NCBI RefSeq assembly: GCF_000143415.4
Contig: NW_003314360.1
Location: forward strand, 550,595 to 614,594
DNA length: 64,000 nucleotides
Origin: Selaginella moellendorffii
Lineage: Eukaryota; Plantae; Lycopodiophyta
Reading direction: 5' to 3'
This document shows, one piece after another, positions 13,248 through 22,538 of this stretch. Both the position numbers and the translations under genes were made by a program. Positions within the stretch are counted from its first letter, which is position 1; each line of letters begins with the position of its first letter. The notes under the pieces were generated by a model that made no database searches, was not told the DNA's origin, and worked only from the letters and a program-made list of their open reading frames with translations.

Positions 13248-14938
13248 ATGCGGCTGCTTGGCTTCCTCGCGTCTGTTGCTGCTGCTGCGTCGTTCGGCCG
13301 AGGGCGAGGGCGAGGGCGATGGCAAGGAGGGGAATGTGGCTTGTATGTGCACGCCAGCACCCCGTCGCCCACGACCTGTTGGAGCCGGGGGATCAGCGTG
13401 CTCAACTACATCGTCCCCAAGAAGAAGAAAGGCGTCAGGCCTCGCTTCTGCCTCACGCGGCTCAAGAAGAGGAGGATCATCGGCAACCTGGTGAAGCGGT
13501 CCAAGAGGCATACATGGACGAGCAAGAGGAGGCTGGCGATGGAAGTGGATGCCGTCAAACAGGTGGAGGAGGAGGAGAAGAGGAGGAGGAGGGCCGTAGA
13601 GGACAGGCCCCTGCTGCTGCAGCTGAGAAGGCAGCAGCAGAGGGCGGGCCGGGTGCGGAGGATTCTGGGCGAGCAAAGGACCTTTGCAGACAAGGCCGCC
13701 GACGTGTATGCCGAGCTCATTCGCCTGAGAGCAGCAGGCAAGCCGTTGTCCCAGCTGAGCTACGACGGCATTGACAGGTGGTTCAAGAGTGACACCGCTG
13801 CTTTCGCGGGCCAGAGGAGTGCGGAACCCGGCAGGGCACAAGTTGCGTCGGCACTGGAATCCAACGGGAGCGTGTTTCATGGCCTGGGGTGGCTGGGCAG
13901 GGGAAGGTGGAACGTTCACACCACGACGATAGACGATGCTGGAGTGTGCCGGAGGTGTCACGAGCAGCTGTCCACGTACAAGACCGACGCACAAGAGGCG
14001 GACAAGTTCGCCCGTCACATGGTGAACCTCGCCTCCAAGAGCGTCCATCGCTTGCATTTCGACATGTTCTCGGTGAGCCAGCTTCCTCTCCCCACCCCTG
14101 TCTGTGAGTGACGACGCTCTTTTCCAAAGGATTGGATGCACCTCACCTCGTACGACGCCATCCTGGACGGTCTAAGCTTGCGACGCTGCAACGTTGACTC
14201 GCGCCTCAAGCTCGTCAGGAGCGCAACCTTCCACGACATTGTGCGTTACGTTACAGAAAGAGTGTCGCTCCTGCTGCTCACTGGCCCATGTCTGCCTTGC
14301 AGTTGAAATCAGCGGTGGAGGAGCTGCGAATGCGGTCCCTCAAGTTCTTGGTTGTGCTCGACACCGAGGGAGCTCATGCGAACGGGAACTCACCGGTGGC
14401 TGGGGATCCCAAGCTGTTTCTGTACCAGCTGAAACAAGACAAGGAGCTCTACACGGTGCCCAAGGGAGTGGACTCGACCTGGTAGTGGTACCTTCCAGCC
14501 TTTTATTTCAGTGGTTGTTATGTTCTTTGCTCCCCAAGGCTTGCCCTCTATGCTGCCATGAAGCACGGATGCATGCTGCTCACCAACGACACCCTGGAGA
14601 AGCCGAGAAAGCTATACCCAGGCATGTTCTTACCCAAGTGGATGGAGAGGCATCAGGTTTGTCTTTCATTCATGTTGAGTTTTTATCGTCTGCTTCATTT
14701 GCGCTTGCAGGTTCGTTTTGATCTTCCAATTCAGTTGTCATGGCCGCCAGCTTATTCGGTGGCGATCCAGGTTGGTTTGCCTGCAATTGTTTCATTTCAC
14801 CGCCATTTATCCGAGTCTGCTTTTTTCTTCCAGGAGTCTCTGGAGGGCTCGTGGCATGTTCCCAGCTACAGCGCTCATGATCTGACACAACCTAGGCCGT
14901 GGCTATGCATCACGCGGCCAAGAAAGCTGGTCTACTAA
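13248..14938 (+). CDS. PRORP-like (protein-only RNase P) paralogue, degenerate active site, PPR arm missing; exons 13248-14072, 14130-14240, 14303-14481, 14539-14656, 14711-14770, 14834-14938
   Basis: WFKS, FHGLGWLGRGRWNV, GVCRRCHEQL, YDAILDG, LYAA...LLTND, PKWMERHQV, PPAYSVAIQES..GSWHVP, WLC. Confidence 0.88.
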
Positions 14939-17558: not shown

Positions 17559-18937
17559 ATGGAGCGATCATCGTTGATTGTCGCGTTTGGCGAGATGTTG
17601 ATTGATTTTGTTCCCACTGTTGGTGGATTGTCGCTAGCGGATGCCCCGGCCTTCAAGAAGGCGCCAGGTGGCGCGCCAGCCAACGTTGCTGTGGCCGTGT
17701 CCCGCCTTGGTGGGCACTCGGCATTCATCGGGAAGGTGCTGCGCTCTCTCTCTCTCTCTCTGTCTGTGTGTGGTTGGTTCCTGTTTTCAACTCCCTTGCG
17801 GATCCTGAATCAGGTTGGCGAGGATGAGTTTGGGTATATGCTGGCCGAGATACTCAAGCAGAACAAGGTTGAGGACAGGGGCATGAGGTTCGACCCCCAC
17901 GCTCGCACGGCCCTCGCCTTCGTTACGCTGAAAGAAGATGGGGAGAGGGAGTTTATGTTCTACAGGAATCCAAGTGCTGATATGCTTCTCAGGCCTGATG
18001 AGCTCGACGAGGAGCTTATTAGCAAGGTGAGTGAGGCATGACTTCAGCTGGCTGACTATTTTGATGGCTAGGCGTCGGTGCTCCACTATGGGTCCATCAG
18101 CCTCATCTCGGAGCCATGCAGATCGGCACACCTGGCAGCCATGGACGTGGCAAGCAAAGCAGGCGTGCTACTGTCATACGATCCCAATTTGAGGCTGCCA
18201 CTGTGGCCTTCGGCTGAGGAAGCTCGCAAAGGAATCTTAAGCATATGGGACAGGGCCGATCTCATCAAGGTAAATCTAACAATTTCAAGTAAGCAAGTAT
18301 TACAAGTGTTACAGGTGAGTGAAGAGGAGCTCCAGTTTCTGACTGGCAAAGATCCATTTTCGGACGAAGCAGCCCTGTCCGTATGGCATTCAAACCTCAA
18401 GCTCTTACTCGTAACTGAGGGTCATCGGGGTTGCCGCTACTATACGAGCGTAAGCAGTTCCGTCCTGGGATCATACACTCATACATGTTTATAACAGGAT
18501 TTCCACGGGAGAGTGGACGGTATCAAAGTGCAAGCCGTAGACACCACCGGTGCTGGGGATGCCTTCGTGGGAGGCCTTCTGAGCCAGCTTGTGGGCGATT
18601 TGTCGCTCTACAAGGTATGCATATATGTAGCCTCAGGACATGCATGATGTGTGTGGGCTTTCCAACAGGACGAGCAGAGATTGAGAGCAGCTCTCAAGTT
18701 TGCCAATGCATGCGGAGCAATAACGACGACGGAAAGAGGTGCAATCCCTGCATTGCCTGACAGGGACACGGTGCTGCGGCTCATAGGTACGCTCTTTTTA
18801 TCATTCCCTGTAGTAACAAACAAATTGACGCAGACGAGATCCCCAAATCTCGGATACCCCGGGCGCCTTCGTGGTCCAACATCACGCGCTGGCGACTTGA
18901 AGATCACGAGCACGAGGGAGCTGTTCCAGCAGCGTGA
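17559..18937 (+). CDS. FRK: Fructokinase (pfkB family), multi-exon
   Basis: [60 protein letters not shown]. Confidence 0.95.
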
Positions 18938-19047
18938 ATCCAATCATATGATCACTATGCTCCAATTGTGAATAAACGGAGGATGAATCCCGTATCAAGA
19001 CTAATTCTTCTTTTCCAATCTGAGTAAAGCACACATATCACAAGAGA

Positions 19048-19278
19048 TCACACGAGCCTCGAGTACTCCCAAAGGATCTGGACTAGCCTCCGGAACTCGG
19101 CAATAACGAAGTCGAGCCTGTGGCGTCTCCACAGGCAGAAGAAGAGAATGCAGCCCAGGAGCAGGATGAGACAGACGGCAAGCACCACCGTCCCAACCCA
19201 GGCCGCTGTGGACGGGGCAGAGAGGGAGAGGAGCGAGGATCCTGCATTCTCGAGCCCCGGAAGCTCCCACATGACCAT
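19048..19278 (-). CDS. Hypothetical small single-pass membrane protein
   Basis: Hydrophobic WVGTVVLAVCLILLLGCILFFCLW followed by basic RRHR; no family recognised. Confidence 0.35.
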   Translation of the reverse strand: MVMWELPGLENAGSSLLSLSAPSTAAWVGTVVLAVCLILLLGCILFFCLWRRHRLDFVIAEFRRLVQILWEYSRLV

Positions 19279-19449
19279 GGCGCTGAAGGACATATATAAT
19301 TTTTAGGGCGGGGCGTACATTAGAATCGAACCTTGGCTTGAAATTGAGTGCCCTGGGTGGACTTTCCTTCCGACTTGTTCACTTTGTAGCTATGGTGGCT
19401 TTGTCCAGGAGCTGCTGGGAAATGCCCCAGGCTACCTAGGGTTTGCGCC

Positions 19450-21562
19450 ATGCCCAAAGGCGCAGCTCACTTGAGCTGCTACGAGGTAGGTAAAAGATTG
19501 ATTGCTTCTCTCCTTCGACGAGCCCCTCTTAGATTTGGCATTTTTGTCGTATTTCTTCACATCATTCATCCAGTGATTTTTAACTCTAGTTTGATGGCAA
19601 GGGATGAGACATGTCCACTAGGACAAGACACTGGGACTCCCTCCGGACAAAGCTCCATGCTGCTTGTTTGCTAGACGAGACGGGTCTCGATCCAAAGTCC
19701 CGTGAAGGCTTGCTTGCCAAGGTGAATCCAGATTTCTGACAAACACGGCCGCGATTCGATATATAATTGTAGCTGGCAGGATTGGTGCTGTTCCAGTGAA
19801 ATGGAGTGTGGACATACACAAGATACATCTCGGCTGGAAGCACGTAACAGATGGAGGCGGCTCAAGAACACAGTGGCTTTTGCGGCTGCCATCAAATCGT
19901 CTCTGGCCCATGATCTGCTCGAGGACAAACTTCACGTCGATCCCGTAAAAGGCAATGACAGTGTTGCTACCGGTGCAGCAGCTCAGGCTTCGATGCCAGT
20001 TAAAGCCAAAGGAAGGAAAGGAATGGAAGGCCTTGTGGTCCAGCAAGACAGAGGTTACATGTCTTGCTTCCAAGATTTTTATGTCGCCTGCCTCAAGGTA
20101 CTTCACTCGCGTAGCTTTTTTATCATAGCATGGTGCCGCACTCACCCGAAGCACGTTTTTGTCTTACGCAGCTGCCAGTCGTTCACTTCTTTATTGGAGT
20201 TTTCCTGGCTCCAGTTGCTTTGGCCTCGATCTTCACGCCACTCTATCTATCGGATGCCAAGGGGCTCAAGCTCGTCGAGTCGCAAGAAGCGGGTTCGTCG
20301 TGCGACTCATCCAAGATATGGAGCTGCTTGAATGTTTTTCTCTACTCGTACGTACGTACATCAGATGTGGCCATGCTACTTAGTGGCTCTTTGCAGGCTA
20401 TCCTTGTCAACAACCTTCGGTGGCTCGCCAATCTCTGCAATCTCGCCATTCTGTCTACTTGTTGCGAATCTTCACACGCTCATGGCTCAGTTCTTGTTTG
20501 TGTTTCTGAGTGGTGCCGGTAAGACGGTAGAGATGGCTGAAATTCGGTCTCGTAGCTCATGTCGTGAGAGGTTGCTGTTTGGTGCAGTTTTCGCTCGTAT
20601 GTCACAGCCAGCGCATCCCATAAGGTGCTCCAAGAAAGCCATAATAAAAAACAATGACTTCGGGACATCAGATGACGAAGATGGCAGATCCAAGTATAAA
20701 GGATTCATCTCTCCTGCGCCCTCTTGACTCACTCGTCGTGCGTTTTGTGTGTCACGCAGAGTCTTTGTTATACGGCTGGTACTGACGGGGCCTCCTCCCT
20801 GCGAGCTCGTGGATGCAAAGATACGCCTCACATTTCGCATTTATGTGAGGCTGCCGTCCGGGTCGATGTTCTGCTCGACACAGGATTTGGACCTGGTGCG
20901 TTCAGAAGTACGTACACACGCACATATATACGTTTGGACTTGGGTTACCTGAGCTTAGTAATCTCATCTAACATTGTCGTCTAAGCGGTGCAGGTTGCAT
21001 ACCTAAGATATGGACTGACAGTACGCCACGTAATAAACTCCAAGAGTCCGATTAGCGGGCACACTTTGGACACTCTTGCTCAGGGAGATGCGTCCTTCTC
21101 GCTGACGATAATGGGTGTGGAGCGCAGCTCCATGCAGCCCATCTTCCATGTGGAGGTGAGCCTTGACTTCTCCACACCAGTTTAATCCGAGGCCAAGTGT
21201 GGTGTGTGACAGGATTACTTCATATGTGATGGAGACGTGATATGGGATGGGGAGTACCTCGACTTCGTAGGAGTGAACGACAAGGGCCTGAGAGTACTAG
21301 ACCATTCCAAGATAGACATGTTGAAACCATTCAAGGTTCTCTATCCCTCTCTTGATAGTTTTCACTCCTGAAGAGATTTCCTTCTCAGGTGGCGGGAGTT
21401 GTAACACAAGCCATAGCAAGAATGGAAGGCGAAGTTGCAAGACACAAAGCTGAAGCGGATCTAAAGGAAGAGAAAAACCACGAACCACTTTCGGAATCAG
21501 ATTGGAAGACAAGCGGTGTGAGAATCAGGAAACTATGGAAAACAATATCTGGTTCGAAGTAA
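19450..21562 (+). CDS. KirBac/Kir-like two-TM inward-rectifier-family channel; exons 19450-19485, 19675-19721, 19773-20097, 20172-20347, 20397-20518, 20588-20693, 20760-20907, 20994-21155, 21213-21335, 21389-21562
   Basis: FQDFYV slide helix, TM1, FLYSLSLSTTFGGS pore, TM2 ending SGAVFARMSQP, cytoplasmic DLDLVRSE, TVRHVINSKSP, DVIWDGEYLD, LDHSK; all introns GT-AG; first two exons less certain. Confidence 0.85.
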
Positions 21563-21590
21563 AATAGAAAGTAATTTCTAGCAGCCTGGG

Positions 21591-21598
21591 TAGGGTTT
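21591..21598 (+). promoter_or_regulatory. Telo-box (TAGGGTTT) 5 nt before the ATG; further copies at 19437-19444, 10489-10496 and TAGGGTT at 22006-22012
   Basis: Exact motif seen; the AAACCCTA/TAGGGTTT telo-box is a known plant 5'-region element. Confidence 0.6.
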
Positions 21599-21603
21599 GG
21601 GCC

Positions 21604-21991
21604 ATGGGGAAGAGCAGGAAGCGGCAAGCGGCAAAGCGGATGATGGACATTGACCATGATCAAGGTAAACAAACATCCATCTATTTCTTCTCCCTTGTTC
21701 CGATGCTGCTCCTGAATAGAGGCACAGGGCATGGATGTAGACGAGCCCAAATCCACATCCAACCCACCCAATGGGTAGGTGTTATTTGTTTTCTTGAAGC
21801 TGCCCAATGCTCTCTTGCACGGCAGGCTGTCCAAGGAATCCAAATTGATCGCAAAGCGGCGTCGTGCCGTGAATGTACGCAAGAAGGCGGCGGCTGACAA
21901 GGCGCTGGCGATGCTGGAGAAGAAACAGCAAAAGGCTCAGACGGATCTGGCAAAGGTGTGTCGCAAGAATCTACTCAAGAAGCTGTACTAG
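21604..21991 (+). CDS. Small basic protein of unknown function; exons 21604-21664, 21720-21774, 21826-21991
   Basis: MGKSRKR, MDID/MDVD, K-rich helix ending KKLY; canonical short introns; resembles a small conserved plant family recalled from memory. Confidence 0.7.
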
Positions 21992-22015
21992 GTAGTGGAA
22001 AGAGGTAGGGTTGCA

Positions 22016-22387
22016 ATGGAGAGTCATCATGCCCGGCTGCTAGCCTTCGATTTTGTGAGGAAACAGGTTGGCCGTCGTGTAGAGATGGTGGGGGTGGCGG
22101 TGAGCGTGGAGCGCAAGCCCAAGTACGTGCGCTTTGCTGTGGACGACGGCACGGGCTGCATATCTTGCATCTTGTGGACCAACCAGAGTGGCGCCCCCCA
22201 GCAGCAGGCAGCGGCAGACATGGCGCGGCTTGTCACTCTGGGGGGCCTGCTCGCGGTGCACGGCCGCGTCTCCCGCTACCACCACCACCCGCAGCTCACC
22301 GTTTCGTCTCTCCTGCCACAGCCGGATGCCAATGCCGAGGTTTACCACTGGATGGAGTGTATCAAGCTTGCGCTAGATTGCTATTAG
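22016..22387 (+). CDS. STN1: CST complex subunit STN1 (single OB fold, 123 aa, intronless)
   Basis: HARLLAFDF, VEMVG, KYVRFAVDDGTGCISCILW, DANAEVYHWMEC. Confidence 0.88.
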   Translation: MESHHARLLAFDFVRKQVGRRVEMVGVAVSVERKPKYVRFAVDDGTGCISCILWTNQSGAPQQQAAADMARLVTLGGLLAVHGRVSRYHHHPQLTVSSLLPQPDANAEVYHWMECIKLALDCY

Positions 22388-22538
22388 TTCTCCAAATTGT
22401 GGCCCTCCCTGTTAAATACAAGTTAGCCTAAAGGGAAACGATAAAAAGGCGCTGCGCAGGGCAAGAGGGCGAGGGATTGATAGCCCTCTGAATCCCATGT
22501 CCAGTTGATCCATAGCATATAACAAGGTAGAGCAATCC

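What the first reader, a model, noticed from the sequence alone, without database searches (positions are those of the whole stretch)
19450..21562. Intact 10-exon KirBac-like channel in a land plant with a non-canonical selectivity filter (TFGGS)
Seen: the spliced protein has slide helix, TM1, pore, TM2 and a full Kir cytoplasmic domain, and the ORF track shows it only as fragments. From memory it lines up closely with bacterial KirBac1.1: GAVFARMSQP vs GLVFARFARP, DLDLVRSE vs DLKLVRNE, HVINSKSPISGHTLDTLAQG vs HVIDESSPLFGETPESLAEG. The pore reads FLYSLSLSTTFGGS against FFFSVETLATVGYG, so GYG becomes GGS and the pore-helix Glu becomes Ser. Known: angiosperm K+ channels are Shaker and TPK/KCO types, not true Kir, and GYG changes abolish K+ selectivity (e.g. 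GIRK2 weaver). Inference: a bacterial-type Kir lineage kept in non-seed plants, possibly conducting other ions. I know of no functional study of it.
Basis: partly seen in the sequence, partly recalled or inferred. Interest (0 to 1): 0.85.

Follow-up and report, generated by a model that had tools for sequence, protein, structure and literature searches.

The report
Spikemoss Kir-fold channel lacking potassium filter
This Selaginella gene is intact and expressed, and it encodes a protein built like a bacterial inward-rectifier potassium channel but with a different, very old and strictly conserved pore motif (TTFGGS in place of TxGYG), from a plant family that nobody seems to have studied.

Summary
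Window 19450-21562 (+) carries a 10-exon gene of Selaginella moellendorffii (scaffold GL377664.1). All nine GT-AG introns appear as spliced joints in transcript contigs; seven in four studies, the two upstream ones in three.

The annotated 435-aa product (SELMODRAFT_123397) matches my 8-exon core model exactly. Its AlphaFold model has the Kir fold (Foldseek, KirBac3.1 E 5e-23). It aligns without gaps to KirBac across the pore, with TTFGGS opposite T[IV]GYG.

- **Start codon.** The ATG at 19450 opens only a 13-codon upstream ORF. The coding start is ATG 19611 (479 aa, supported by a conserved N-terminal motif) or the annotated ATG 19801.
- **Filter.** TTFGG is not local decay. It is nearly invariant across Chlorokybus, Klebsormidium, Closterium, bryophytes, lycophytes, ferns and gymnosperms. 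No member found has GYG.
- **Range.** The family reaches seed plants (Ginkgo, Taxus, Cryptomeria). No named hit is an angiosperm.

This copy is a shortened, moderately fast-evolving paralogue, but still constrained: the two haplotypes differ by 0 non-synonymous changes in 1308 coding bases.

Function is inferred, not shown. The most likely reading is a tetrameric cation channel with altered selectivity. I found no paper on the family. The scan had already noted this family on other DNA of the same genome.

The parts
19450..19485 (+). 3' part of exon 1 (5' leader; transcription start not determined). It holds the ATG of an upstream ORF that continues in exon 2 to TGA 19605-19607 (MPKGAAHLSCYEG*).
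   Evidence: Joint 19485|19602 in runs X2, X3, X4. Translation across the joint.
19602..19721 (+). Exon 2. ATG 19611 opens the longest in-frame ORF (479 aa). It encodes a degenerate copy of the family's N-terminal motif (HWDSLRTKLHAACLLDETGLDP).
   Evidence: Joints. Frame and translation. Match to the extreme N-termini of P0080, P0078, P0081, P0079 and P0091.
19780..20097 (+). Exon 3. It holds the annotated start ATG 19801, the variable N-terminal region, the conserved KGRKGMEG strand and the start of the slide helix (QDFYVACLK).
20172..20347 (+). Exon 4: TM1 (residues 102-125 of P0104, about 20178-20249), the turret, and most of the pore helix.
   Evidence: Helices in the AF2 model.
20397..20518 (+). 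Exon 5: end of the pore helix, the filter, and most of TM2.
   Evidence: Filter and TM2 are the most conserved regions of clade A, 0.93 and 0.92.
20410..20427 (+). Filter codons ACA ACC TTC GGT GGC TCG = T163 T164 F165 G166 G167 S168. T164-S168 (TFGGS) lies opposite KirBac TVGYG.
   Evidence: Sequence. Gap-free alignments. Model pLDDT for residues 161-170 is 91.
20588..20693 (+). Exon 6: end of TM2 (VFARMSQP, including invariant F200, R202, P206), and the linker into the cytoplasmic domain.
20760..20907 (+). Exon 7: cytoplasmic beta-sandwich, first part (up to DLDLVRSE).
20908..20993 (+). Intron 7, retained in a minority of contigs in runs X1 and X3. A retained form would end the frame early.
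   Evidence: Depth and letter differences inside the intron (tables 2 and 3). The ORF 20749..20952 ends inside it.
20994..21155 (+). Exon 8: cytoplasmic domain (RHVINSKSPISGHTLDTLAQGD). This is the stretch that on its own hits KirBac1.1.
21213..21335 (+). Exon 9: end of the cytoplasmic domain.
21389..21562 (+). Exon 10: C-terminal helix (model residues 378-408), a tail with the RKLWK motif, and the stop TAA at 21560-21562.

Best explanation
Shown:
- The gene is intact, transcribed and correctly spliced in Selaginella moellendorffii.
- It encodes a subunit with the full inward-rectifier (Kir/KirBac) fold.
- It belongs to an ancient streptophyte family in which the K+ signature T-x-G-Y-G is replaced by a strictly conserved T-T-F-G-G-(S/A)-P.

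Inferred:
- Four subunits assemble around a central pore through pore helix, filter and TM2, as in Kir channels.
- The inner half of the filter (Thr-Thr-Phe-Gly) can still offer hydroxyl and carbonyl oxygens like sites S4 and S3.
- The outer half is rebuilt. Tyr becomes Gly, the second Gly becomes Ser or Ala followed by Pro, and the pore-helix Glu becomes Ser.
- The pore is therefore most likely cation-conducting with weak or altered selectivity, like NaK or CNG, rather than K+-selective.
- The Kir-type cytoplasmic domain, with the invariant bundle-crossing Phe (F200), would do the gating in response to an unknown ligand.

This copy. It is a shortened, somewhat faster-evolving paralogue of the canonical lycophyte gene (P0091). 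Its leader holds a short upstream ORF that stops 3 bases before the first candidate start codon.
For: Gene and expression:
- The model and its identity to the annotated protein.
- Nine spliced joints: the seven core introns in four studies, the two upstream introns in three.

Fold and homology:
- AF2 mean pLDDT 81.3, above 90 over most of the core from residue 70 to 410.
- Foldseek: KirBac3.1 E 4.7e-23, KirBac1.1 TM-score 0.84 by target.
- Sequence: KirBac3.1 E 1.3e-12, family profile against KirBac1.1 E 1.1e-22.
- The Atlas structure search has bacterial Kir clusters first.

Filter:
- Gap-free alignment of TFGGS with T[IV]GYG.
- TTFGG is conserved in dozens of clusters that are under 50% identical to each other, from Chlorokybus to gymnosperms.
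- Filter and TM2 are the most conserved segments of clade A, 0.93 and 0.92.

Constraint on this copy:
- It keeps 169 of 191 highly conserved clade-A positions.
- Between the two haplotype scaffolds the core CDS has 1 synonymous and 0 non-synonymous differences in 1308 nt. The surrounding non-coding sequence has 7 in 961 nt. Fisher p = 0.012, and P(0 non-synonymous) is about 7e-4.

Assembly:
- Four copies of residues 64-210 scored ipSAE 0.45, against 0.00 for the best of 3 controls. The runs agree in at least 52% of their contacts and the partner's pLDDT is at least 57.
- That mark was reached by 21 of 30 proteins solved as pairs of one chain and 0 of 23 solved as single chains.
- The interface lies on pore helix, filter and TM2.
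Against: - No electrophysiology, flux or localisation data exist for any member. Selectivity and even conduction are inferred from analogy with GYG mutants and the NaK and CNG filters, which is established knowledge and was not tested here.
- Pfam does not recognise the membrane part at all. IRK_C scores below its cut-off, 15.2 against 22.5 bits.
- The tetramer score may come from the model's memory of solved Kir tetramers. The tool itself warns of this, and it was calibrated on two copies, not four.
- This copy has the longest branch in clade A, 0.85 against a median of 0.12. It has lost the long N-terminal spacer, carries N184H in the otherwise near-invariant ANxNT motif of TM2, and shows some intron retention.
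- Which membrane holds it is unknown.
Confidence: 0.6

Rival explanations
1. It is still a K+-selective inward rectifier. The TTFGG loop forms enough carbonyl sites for K+ selectivity and the family does ordinary K+ transport.
For: - The fold, the pore-helix length and the filter length are unchanged relative to KirBac in clades A and C.
- The inner Thr and the first Gly of the signature are kept.
Against: - From established knowledge, the Tyr and both Gly residues of GYG are needed for the four-site filter. Single changes, such as GIRK2 weaver or the NaK TVGDG filter, give non-selective pores.
- Here Tyr, the second Gly and the pore-helix Glu are all replaced, in every member.
Confidence: 0.12
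2. It is a non-conducting Kir-fold protein. It could be a regulatory or scaffolding subunit, or a subunit that works only in heteromers with paralogues of clades A, B or C, rather than forming a pore by itself.
For: - S. moellendorffii has at least four family genes in two clades: P0104 and P0091 in clade A, P0056 and P0057 in clade B.
- This copy is the shorter, faster-evolving one.
- Heteromeric Kir channels are known, for example Kir4.1/Kir5.1, which appear in the PDB hit list.
Against: - The pore loop and TM2 are the most conserved part of the family. That is hard to explain without a pore-related function.
- The bundle-crossing Phe and the TM2 Gly are kept.
- The homotetramer prediction passes its controls.
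Confidence: 0.18
3. It is a decaying duplicate (an expressed pseudogene in the making) with no function of its own.
For: - Longest branch in clade A.
- 22 deviations at conserved columns, the most of any clade-A member.
- The N-terminal motif is degenerate, and both allelic differences in the 132-nt N-terminal extension are non-synonymous.
- Partial retention of one intron.
- Earlier scan notes call two other Selaginella paralogues decaying.
Against: - The open frame runs through 10 exons with all splice sites canonical and in use.
- 88% of conserved positions are kept, and the changes are mostly conservative.
- There are 0 non-synonymous differences between haplotypes in the core, where about 7 would be expected under neutrality.
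- The same protein is encoded on both haplotype scaffolds.
Confidence: 0.05
4. The model is an artefact or a contaminant: a mis-spliced pore exon, or bacterial DNA in the assembly.
For: Nothing beyond the general risk. Pfam misses the gene.
Against: - The filter lies inside one exon, and both of that exon's junctions are seen in RNA of four studies.
- The gene has nine spliceosomal introns and plant genes on both sides (LTP, PfkB, an OB-fold protein, a CIPK-type kinase) on two haplotype scaffolds.
- Orthologues are present in many plant genomes.
Confidence: 0.01

Closest known systems
KirBac1.1 / KirBac3.1 (prokaryotic inward rectifiers; PDB 1p7b, 2wll, 1xl4, 4lp8)
   Same: - Same architecture end to end: slide helix, TM1, pore helix, filter loop of equal length, TM2, and the beta-sandwich cytoplasmic domain.
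- Best sequence and fold matches.
- Shared motifs: VFAR..P after TM2, DL.LVR.E, and HVI(D/N)..SP..G.T...L. The bundle-crossing Phe is also shared; its numbering as KirBac1.1 F146 is from memory.
   Different: - TTFGGS in place of TVGYG, and the pore-helix Glu is Ser.
- Eukaryotic gene with nine introns.
- About 65 to 110 extra N-terminal residues, 200 to 400 in most homologues, with their own conserved N-terminal motif.
- A C-terminal helix and tail.
- About 20% identity.
Animal Kir1-Kir7 channels (Pfam IRK + IRK_C)
   Same: Same superfamily and fold. Foldseek E is about 1e-17 to 1e-18 and the family profile E about 1e-8.
   Different: - More distant than KirBac.
- No Pfam IRK hit, and IRK_C is below threshold.
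- No GYG.
- The TM2 position that I map, from memory of the numbering, to the rectification controller (Kir2.1 D172 / KirBac1.1 I138) is Phe192. Strong polyamine or Mg2+ block through that site is therefore not expected.
Non-selective tetrameric cation channels with altered filters (NaK TVGDG; CNG; the GIRK2 weaver mutant)
   Same: The proposed way of working. The inner part of a K-channel filter is kept and the outer part is altered, which in those cases gives Na+/K+ (and Ca2+) permeation. This is established knowledge and was not tested here.
   Different: Not relatives beyond the common pore module. The plant motif TTFGG(S/A)P matches none of their filters. No permeation data exist.
Plant 'Kir-like' KCO3 and TPK channels
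   Same: Only the label. KCO3 is called a one-pore Kir-like channel in the plant literature (PMC8619664).
   Different: KCO3 derives from two-pore TPK channels. By my own knowledge it has a GYG filter and EF hands, and no Kir cytoplasmic domain. The gene here has the Kir cytoplasmic domain and no hit to Pfam's Ion_trans_2 (pore-domain) or EF-hand models.

Membership tests
Kir / IRK superfamily (inward-rectifier fold) | Two TM helices with slide helix and re-entrant pore helix | tested here: met
   AF2 model helices 71-76/86-98, 102-125, 147-163 and 175-203, with pLDDT mostly above 90. Foldseek best hits are KirBac3.1 and KirBac1.1 over about 297 columns.
Kir / IRK superfamily (inward-rectifier fold) | Beta-rich cytoplasmic C-terminal domain (IRK_C) | tested here: met
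   The fold and the PDB sequence matches cover query residues 70-392 against KirBac1.1 27-326. Pfam IRK_C alone is under its cut-off for this protein (15.2 against 22.5 bits). It passes for clade-B and algal members, P0056 at 30.3 and P0107 at 24.6.
Kir / IRK superfamily (inward-rectifier fold) | K+ selectivity signature T-x-G-Y/F-G | tested here: not met
   TTFGGS lies at the aligned position in this protein. No GYG or GFG occurs in any of about 90 full-length family members.
Kir / IRK superfamily (inward-rectifier fold) | Homotetramer around a central pore | tested here: inconclusive
   ipSAE 0.45 against 0.00 for the best of 3 controls. The mark was reached by 21 of 30 proteins solved as pairs of one chain and 0 of 23 solved as single chains. 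The runs agree in at least 52% of their contacts and the partner's pLDDT is at least 57. The interface lies on pore helix, filter and TM2. This is a prediction only and may come from memory of solved Kir tetramers.
Kir / IRK superfamily (inward-rectifier fold) | Inward rectification by Mg2+ or polyamine block; lipid (PIP2) regulation | not testable with these tools
   This needs electrophysiology. The sequence shows only Phe192 at the position mapped to the TM2 rectification site, and that mapping is from memory.
Pfam IRK (PF01007) / IRK_C (PF17655) as curated | Score at or above the gathering threshold | tested here: not met
   No IRK hit. IRK_C scores 15.2 bits against a cut-off of 22.5 for P0104. 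The precomputed Pfam field is '-' for nearly all clade-A proteins.
KirBac (prokaryotic Kir) family | Encoded in a prokaryote; about 300-333 aa; GYG filter | tested here: not met
   The gene has nine spliceosomal introns and sits on two S. moellendorffii haplotype scaffolds among plant genes. No prokaryote genome carries the family motifs. There is no GYG.
Streptophyte TTFGG Kir-like family, clade A (defined here) | LSLSTTFGG(S/A)P filter, ANxNT and FVFLSGAVFARMSQP in TM2, ERSSMQP and RH(I/V)I(D/N) in the cytoplasmic domain | tested here: met
   All are present in P0104, with N184H in ANxNT. It falls in the clade of 43 embryophyte rows with SH-aLRT support 97.
Plant TPK/KCO3 'Kir-like' channels | Ion_trans_2 pore domain(s) with GYG, and EF hands | tested here: not met
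   No Ion_trans_2 or EF-hand hit, and no GYG.

The most novel reading that the evidence does not exclude
The TTFGG Kir-fold proteins are a distinct, ancient class of plant cation channel, non-selective or Ca2+-permeable and gated through a Kir-type cytoplasmic domain. The class arose before the streptophyte radiation, split into three clades with different pore loops (TTFGG[SA]P, TTFGG[TA]R, STGL[QE]PE), and was lost in flowering plants. Because standard surveys rely on GYG and Pfam IRK, the class has been missed. The window's gene would be an expressed short isoform-type paralogue whose translation is tuned by upstream ORFs.
Probability: 0.4. Interest if true: 0.8.

Novelty: new variant of a known kind. 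Interest (0 to 1): 0.62.

Why it matters
Textbook lists of plant K+ channels hold Shaker, TPK/KCO and, in non-flowering plants, BK/SLO types. A true Kir-fold family is not among them.

Here is such a family, conserved from early streptophyte algae to gymnosperms. Its pore loop is more conserved than the rest of the protein, yet it is not a K+ filter.

If it conducts, it is a new kind of plant cation channel. It would also be a natural experiment on what a K-channel scaffold does with Tyr changed to Gly and Gly changed to Ser in the filter.

Its apparent loss in angiosperms parallels that of BK channels (bioRxiv 10.1101/2021.06.01.446568) and bears on what changed in ion signalling on the way to flowering plants.

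Marchantia and Physcomitrium have orthologues, so the question can be tested directly by knockout and electrophysiology.

Tried and rejected
- **Pfam on single exons.** The pieces are too short and gave only a 14-bit IRK_C hint. It was replaced by finding the annotated protein through an exhaustive search with the pore and TM2 exons read through their in-frame intron.
- **Start at ATG 19450.** Rejected because the frame stops right after the first RNA-supported joint.
- **Looking for prokaryotic or GYG-bearing close relatives.** The family profile against the 5.8-billion-protein index gave only streptophyte proteins, though that search is limited by its word index. The scan of 185,579 prokaryote genomes with family motifs confirmed no relative. 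tblastn against plasmids found only an ordinary GYG KirBac in Caballeronia at 24% identity, which I used as outgroup.
- **A full phylogeny with animal, chlorophyte, oomycete and diatom Kir.** Not possible, because no such sequences could be obtained. The Atlas only hints at chlorophyte clusters without Pfam hits.
- **Pseudogene, contamination and mis-splicing readings.** Considered and rejected.
- **An N-terminal organelle transit peptide.** The N-terminus of the long ORF has several acidic residues within the first 30. By eye it does not look like one, but no predictor was available.
- **dN/dS against the paralogue P0091.** Not attempted. At 59% amino-acid identity synonymous sites would be saturated.
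Full report
**What is in the sequence**

I read 18800-22400. Joining the open pieces at GT-AG sites gives an 8-exon model from ATG 19801 to TAA 21562, encoding 435 aa.

The exons are 19801-20097, 20172-20347, 20397-20518, 20588-20693, 20760-20907, 20994-21155, 21213-21335 and 21389-21562.

To get a protein the tools would accept, I searched 1.84 billion cluster representatives with the pore and TM2 exons. The 69-base intron between them, 20519-20587, reads through in frame. I then searched the named index with the best full-length hit. One hit, P0104 = SELMODRAFT_123397 of Selaginella moellendorffii, is identical to my model over all 435 residues.

The window is scaffold GL377664.1 of assembly GCA_000143415.2. 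The same protein is also encoded on the second haplotype scaffold, GL377636.1.

**Expression and gene structure**

I laid contigs of four runs from four different studies on 18900-22100.

- All seven introns of the core model appear as GT..AG joints in all four runs.
- Three runs also show two upstream introns, 19486-19601 and 19722-19779.
The frame of ATG 19450 crosses the first joint and meets TGA at 19605-19607. It is a 13-codon upstream ORF.
- Three bases later, ATG 19611 opens a frame that runs through exon 2 and into exon 3, in phase with the annotated ATG 19801. That adds 44 residues, for 479 aa.

These 44 residues begin with HWDSLRTKLHAACLLDETGLDP. This matches a motif at the very N-terminus of many clade-A homologues, W[KR]R[DE]xLRxRLxxARSIEETGLD[PS]. 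Identity is 46-50% over 28 residues with several of them, and the match always lies at their positions 4-34 or so.

ATG 19611 is therefore probably the ancestral start. However, the two haplotypes differ by two non-synonymous changes in this 132-nt stretch (T13A, W39C). That part looks weakly constrained, and the annotated start stays possible.

The transcription start is not resolved. The contigs merge with a minus-strand transcript upstream and with the next gene downstream. Intron 20908-20993 is retained in a minority of contigs in two runs.

**Is it a Kir?**

Single exons are too short for Pfam. One exon alone already finds KirBac1.1 in the PDB.

| Test | Result |
|---|---|
| P0104 vs PDB, KirBac3.1 | E 1.3e-12 |
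| P0104 vs PDB, KirBac1.1 | E 1e-11, query 70-392 on chain 27-326 |
| 80-member family profile (A1) vs KirBac1.1 | E 1.1e-22 |
| Same profile vs KirBac3.1 | E about 2e-20 |
| Same profile vs animal Kir2, Kir4 and Kir6 | E about 1e-8 to 1e-6 |
| AlphaFold2 model built on that alignment | mean pLDDT 81.3; blocks above 90 over most of residues 70-410 |
| Foldseek vs PDB, KirBac3.1 | E 4.7e-23 |
| Foldseek vs PDB, KirBac1.1 | TM-score 0.84 by target |
| Foldseek vs PDB, animal Kir | E about 1e-17 to 1e-18 |

The model shows a slide helix, TM1 (102-125), a pore helix (147-163), TM2 (175-203), a beta-rich domain (210-366) and a C-terminal helix (378-408). The ESM Atlas look-up agrees with the Kir fold.

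Pfam itself does not file the protein. There is no IRK hit, and IRK_C scores 15.2 bits against a cut-off of 22.5. That is probably why the family is absent from surveys.

**The filter**

HMMER aligns the stretch from pore helix to the VFAR..P motif without a gap against KirBac. T163-T164-F165-G166-G167-S168-P169 (codons 20410-20430) lies opposite A-T-V-G-Y-G-D. The pore-helix Glu of KirBac lies opposite a Ser.

So the inner Thr and the first Gly are kept. Tyr becomes Gly, and the second Gly becomes Ser.

**Not a local accident**

The exhaustive search found 65 clusters, each under 50% identical to the others. Most of them carry LSLSTTFGG followed by S, A or T.

Named members come from these groups:
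- gymnosperms: Ginkgo, Taxus, Cryptomeria
- ferns: Adiantum, Ceratopteris
- lycophytes: Selaginella, Diphasiastrum
- mosses: Physcomitrium, Ceratodon, Sphagnum
- liverworts: Marchantia, Riccia, Calypogeia
- streptophyte algae: Klebsormidium, Chlorokybus, Mesotaenium, Spirogloea, Closterium

No named hit is an angiosperm. A second Chlorokybus paralogue has TSFGG.

A tree of 80 members plus one bacterial KirBac shows three groups (IQ-TREE, quick search, SH-aLRT support):
- Clade A, embryophytes with TTFGG[SA]P: 43 rows, support 97. It includes this gene.
- A clade of short proteins from Klebsormidium, Mesotaenium and mosses, with TTFGG[TA]R.
- Clade B, whose loop is one residue shorter, STGL[QE]PE.

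None of about 90 full-length members has GYG.

Within clade A, the filter and TM2 are the most conserved segments. Mean frequency of the commonest residue is 0.93 and 0.92, against 0.84 for the cytoplasmic domain and 0.32 for the tail.

The scan of 185,579 prokaryote genomes for the family's own motifs confirmed no relative.

**This particular copy**

S. moellendorffii has at least four family genes: P0104 and P0091 in clade A, and P0056 and P0057 in clade B.

- P0104 lacks the 200-400-residue spacer that most clade-A proteins have between the N-terminal motif and the channel core.
- Its end branch is 0.85, against 0.37 for P0091 and a median of 0.12.
- It is about 7 points less identical to other clade-A proteins than P0091 is.
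- It deviates at 22 of 191 highly conserved columns, the most in the clade. The changes are mostly conservative, but they include N184H in the ANxNT motif of TM2.

It is nevertheless constrained. Between the two haplotypes the 1308-nt core CDS has one synonymous and no non-synonymous difference. The surrounding 961 nt of introns and untranslated sequence have seven (Fisher p = 0.012). About seven non-synonymous changes would be expected under neutrality, so P(0) is about 7e-4.

**How it probably works**

Shown: the fold, the conserved pore module, expression, and constraint.

Inferred: four subunits form a pore.
- A complex prediction for four copies of residues 64-210 scored ipSAE 0.45, against 0.00 for the best of three controls.
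- That mark was reached by 21 of 30 proteins solved as pairs of one chain and 0 of 23 solved as single chains.
- The runs agree in at least 52% of their contacts, and the partner's pLDDT is at least 57.
- The confident contacts lie on pore helix 152-163, filter 163-169 and TM2 171-200.
- The tool warns that such a pass may come from memory of solved Kir tetramers, and that it was calibrated on two copies.
- In that model the invariant N182 touches the neighbour's residues 159, 160 and 163. This may be a family-specific way of propping up the loop.

From established knowledge of K-channel filters (NaK TVGDG, CNG channels, GIRK2 weaver), loss of the Tyr and of one Gly should remove the outer K+ sites. 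That would give a weakly selective cation pore.

The Phe that I map to the KirBac1.1 bundle-crossing gate (F146 by my memory of the numbering) is invariant, as F200. The position I map to the rectification controller is Phe192. Gating at the bundle crossing is therefore plausible, and strong rectification through that site is not.

The ligand, the membrane and the ions are unknown.

**Literature and earlier notes**

Seven full-text searches found no paper on this family. One of them searched by gene identifiers. In plant papers 'Kir-like' means KCO3, a TPK derivative (PMC8619664).

A K+ transporter survey that covered Selaginella and Physcomitrella does not mention Kir (PMC3410407).

The scan had already noted this family on other DNA of the same genome: notes s1-344396, s1-363746, s1-430262, s1-419138, s1-432148 and s1-358662. 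Their follow-ups reached the same general reading. I used them as leads only and re-derived everything here.

**Verdict**

This is a real, expressed and constrained member of an ancient, unstudied Kir-fold family without GYG. That makes it a new variant of a known kind. It is of real interest to plant ion-channel biology, but its function is still only inferred.

Noticed in passing
window 19611-19721, and the N-termini of P0080, P0078, P0081, P0079, P0091, P0073, P0003, P0102: Clade-A proteins share a motif at their extreme N-terminus, W[KR]R[DE]xLRxRLxxARSIEETGLD[PS]. Its role is unknown; the S-x-x-E pattern could be a kinase site. The annotated model P0104 lacks the motif because it starts 44 residues later. 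The window's copy has a degenerate version (ACLLDETGLDP).
   Followed up: partly
window 19450-19485 + 19602-19607; also 19603 and about 19656: A 13-codon upstream ORF ends 3 bases before ATG 19611. Exon 2 also holds two more short out-of-frame ATG-started ORFs. This arrangement could shift initiation between ATG 19611 and ATG 19801.
   Followed up: partly
window 19048-19293 (-) with a CT..AC joint at 19283-19331: A minus-strand gene for an 81-aa protein with a hydrophobic stretch has no Pfam hit and an intron in its leader. One contig carries this minus-strand intron together with the plus-strand introns of the channel gene. The two genes therefore seem to be transcribed head to head with overlapping 5' ends.
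   Followed up: partly
window 21604-21991 (+) and 21995-22387 (+): Two small genes lie directly downstream. One is a spliced lysine- and arginine-rich protein, with introns about 21665-21719 and 21775-21825 seen in RNA. The other is a 130-aa OB-fold protein (tRNA_anti-codon 30 bits; Stn1 16 bits, below its cut-off). Transcript contigs run from the channel gene into them.
   Followed up: partly
window 21389-21562; P0091, P0138: The C-terminal tails of clade-A proteins share an R.RKLWK motif after a long predicted helix, although the tail as a whole is poorly conserved.
   Followed up: no
P0013-P0019 and other short hits: Many short predicted proteins from other species start just before LSLSTTFGG. 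This suggests that the intron in front of the filter and TM2 exon (20348-20396 here) sits at a conserved position across the family.
   Followed up: no
L002 / L003 (scaffolds GL377664.1 and GL377636.1): The two haplotype scaffolds are collinear around the gene: LTP-like, PfkB kinase, a small minus-strand gene, the channel, the OB-fold gene, and a CIPK-type kinase with a NAF domain. Over 19300-21700 they differ at about 0.4% of positions.
   Followed up: partly
window 13248-14938: An earlier first-reader note (s1-433210) calls this a PRORP pseudo-enzyme. I did not look at it.
   Followed up: no
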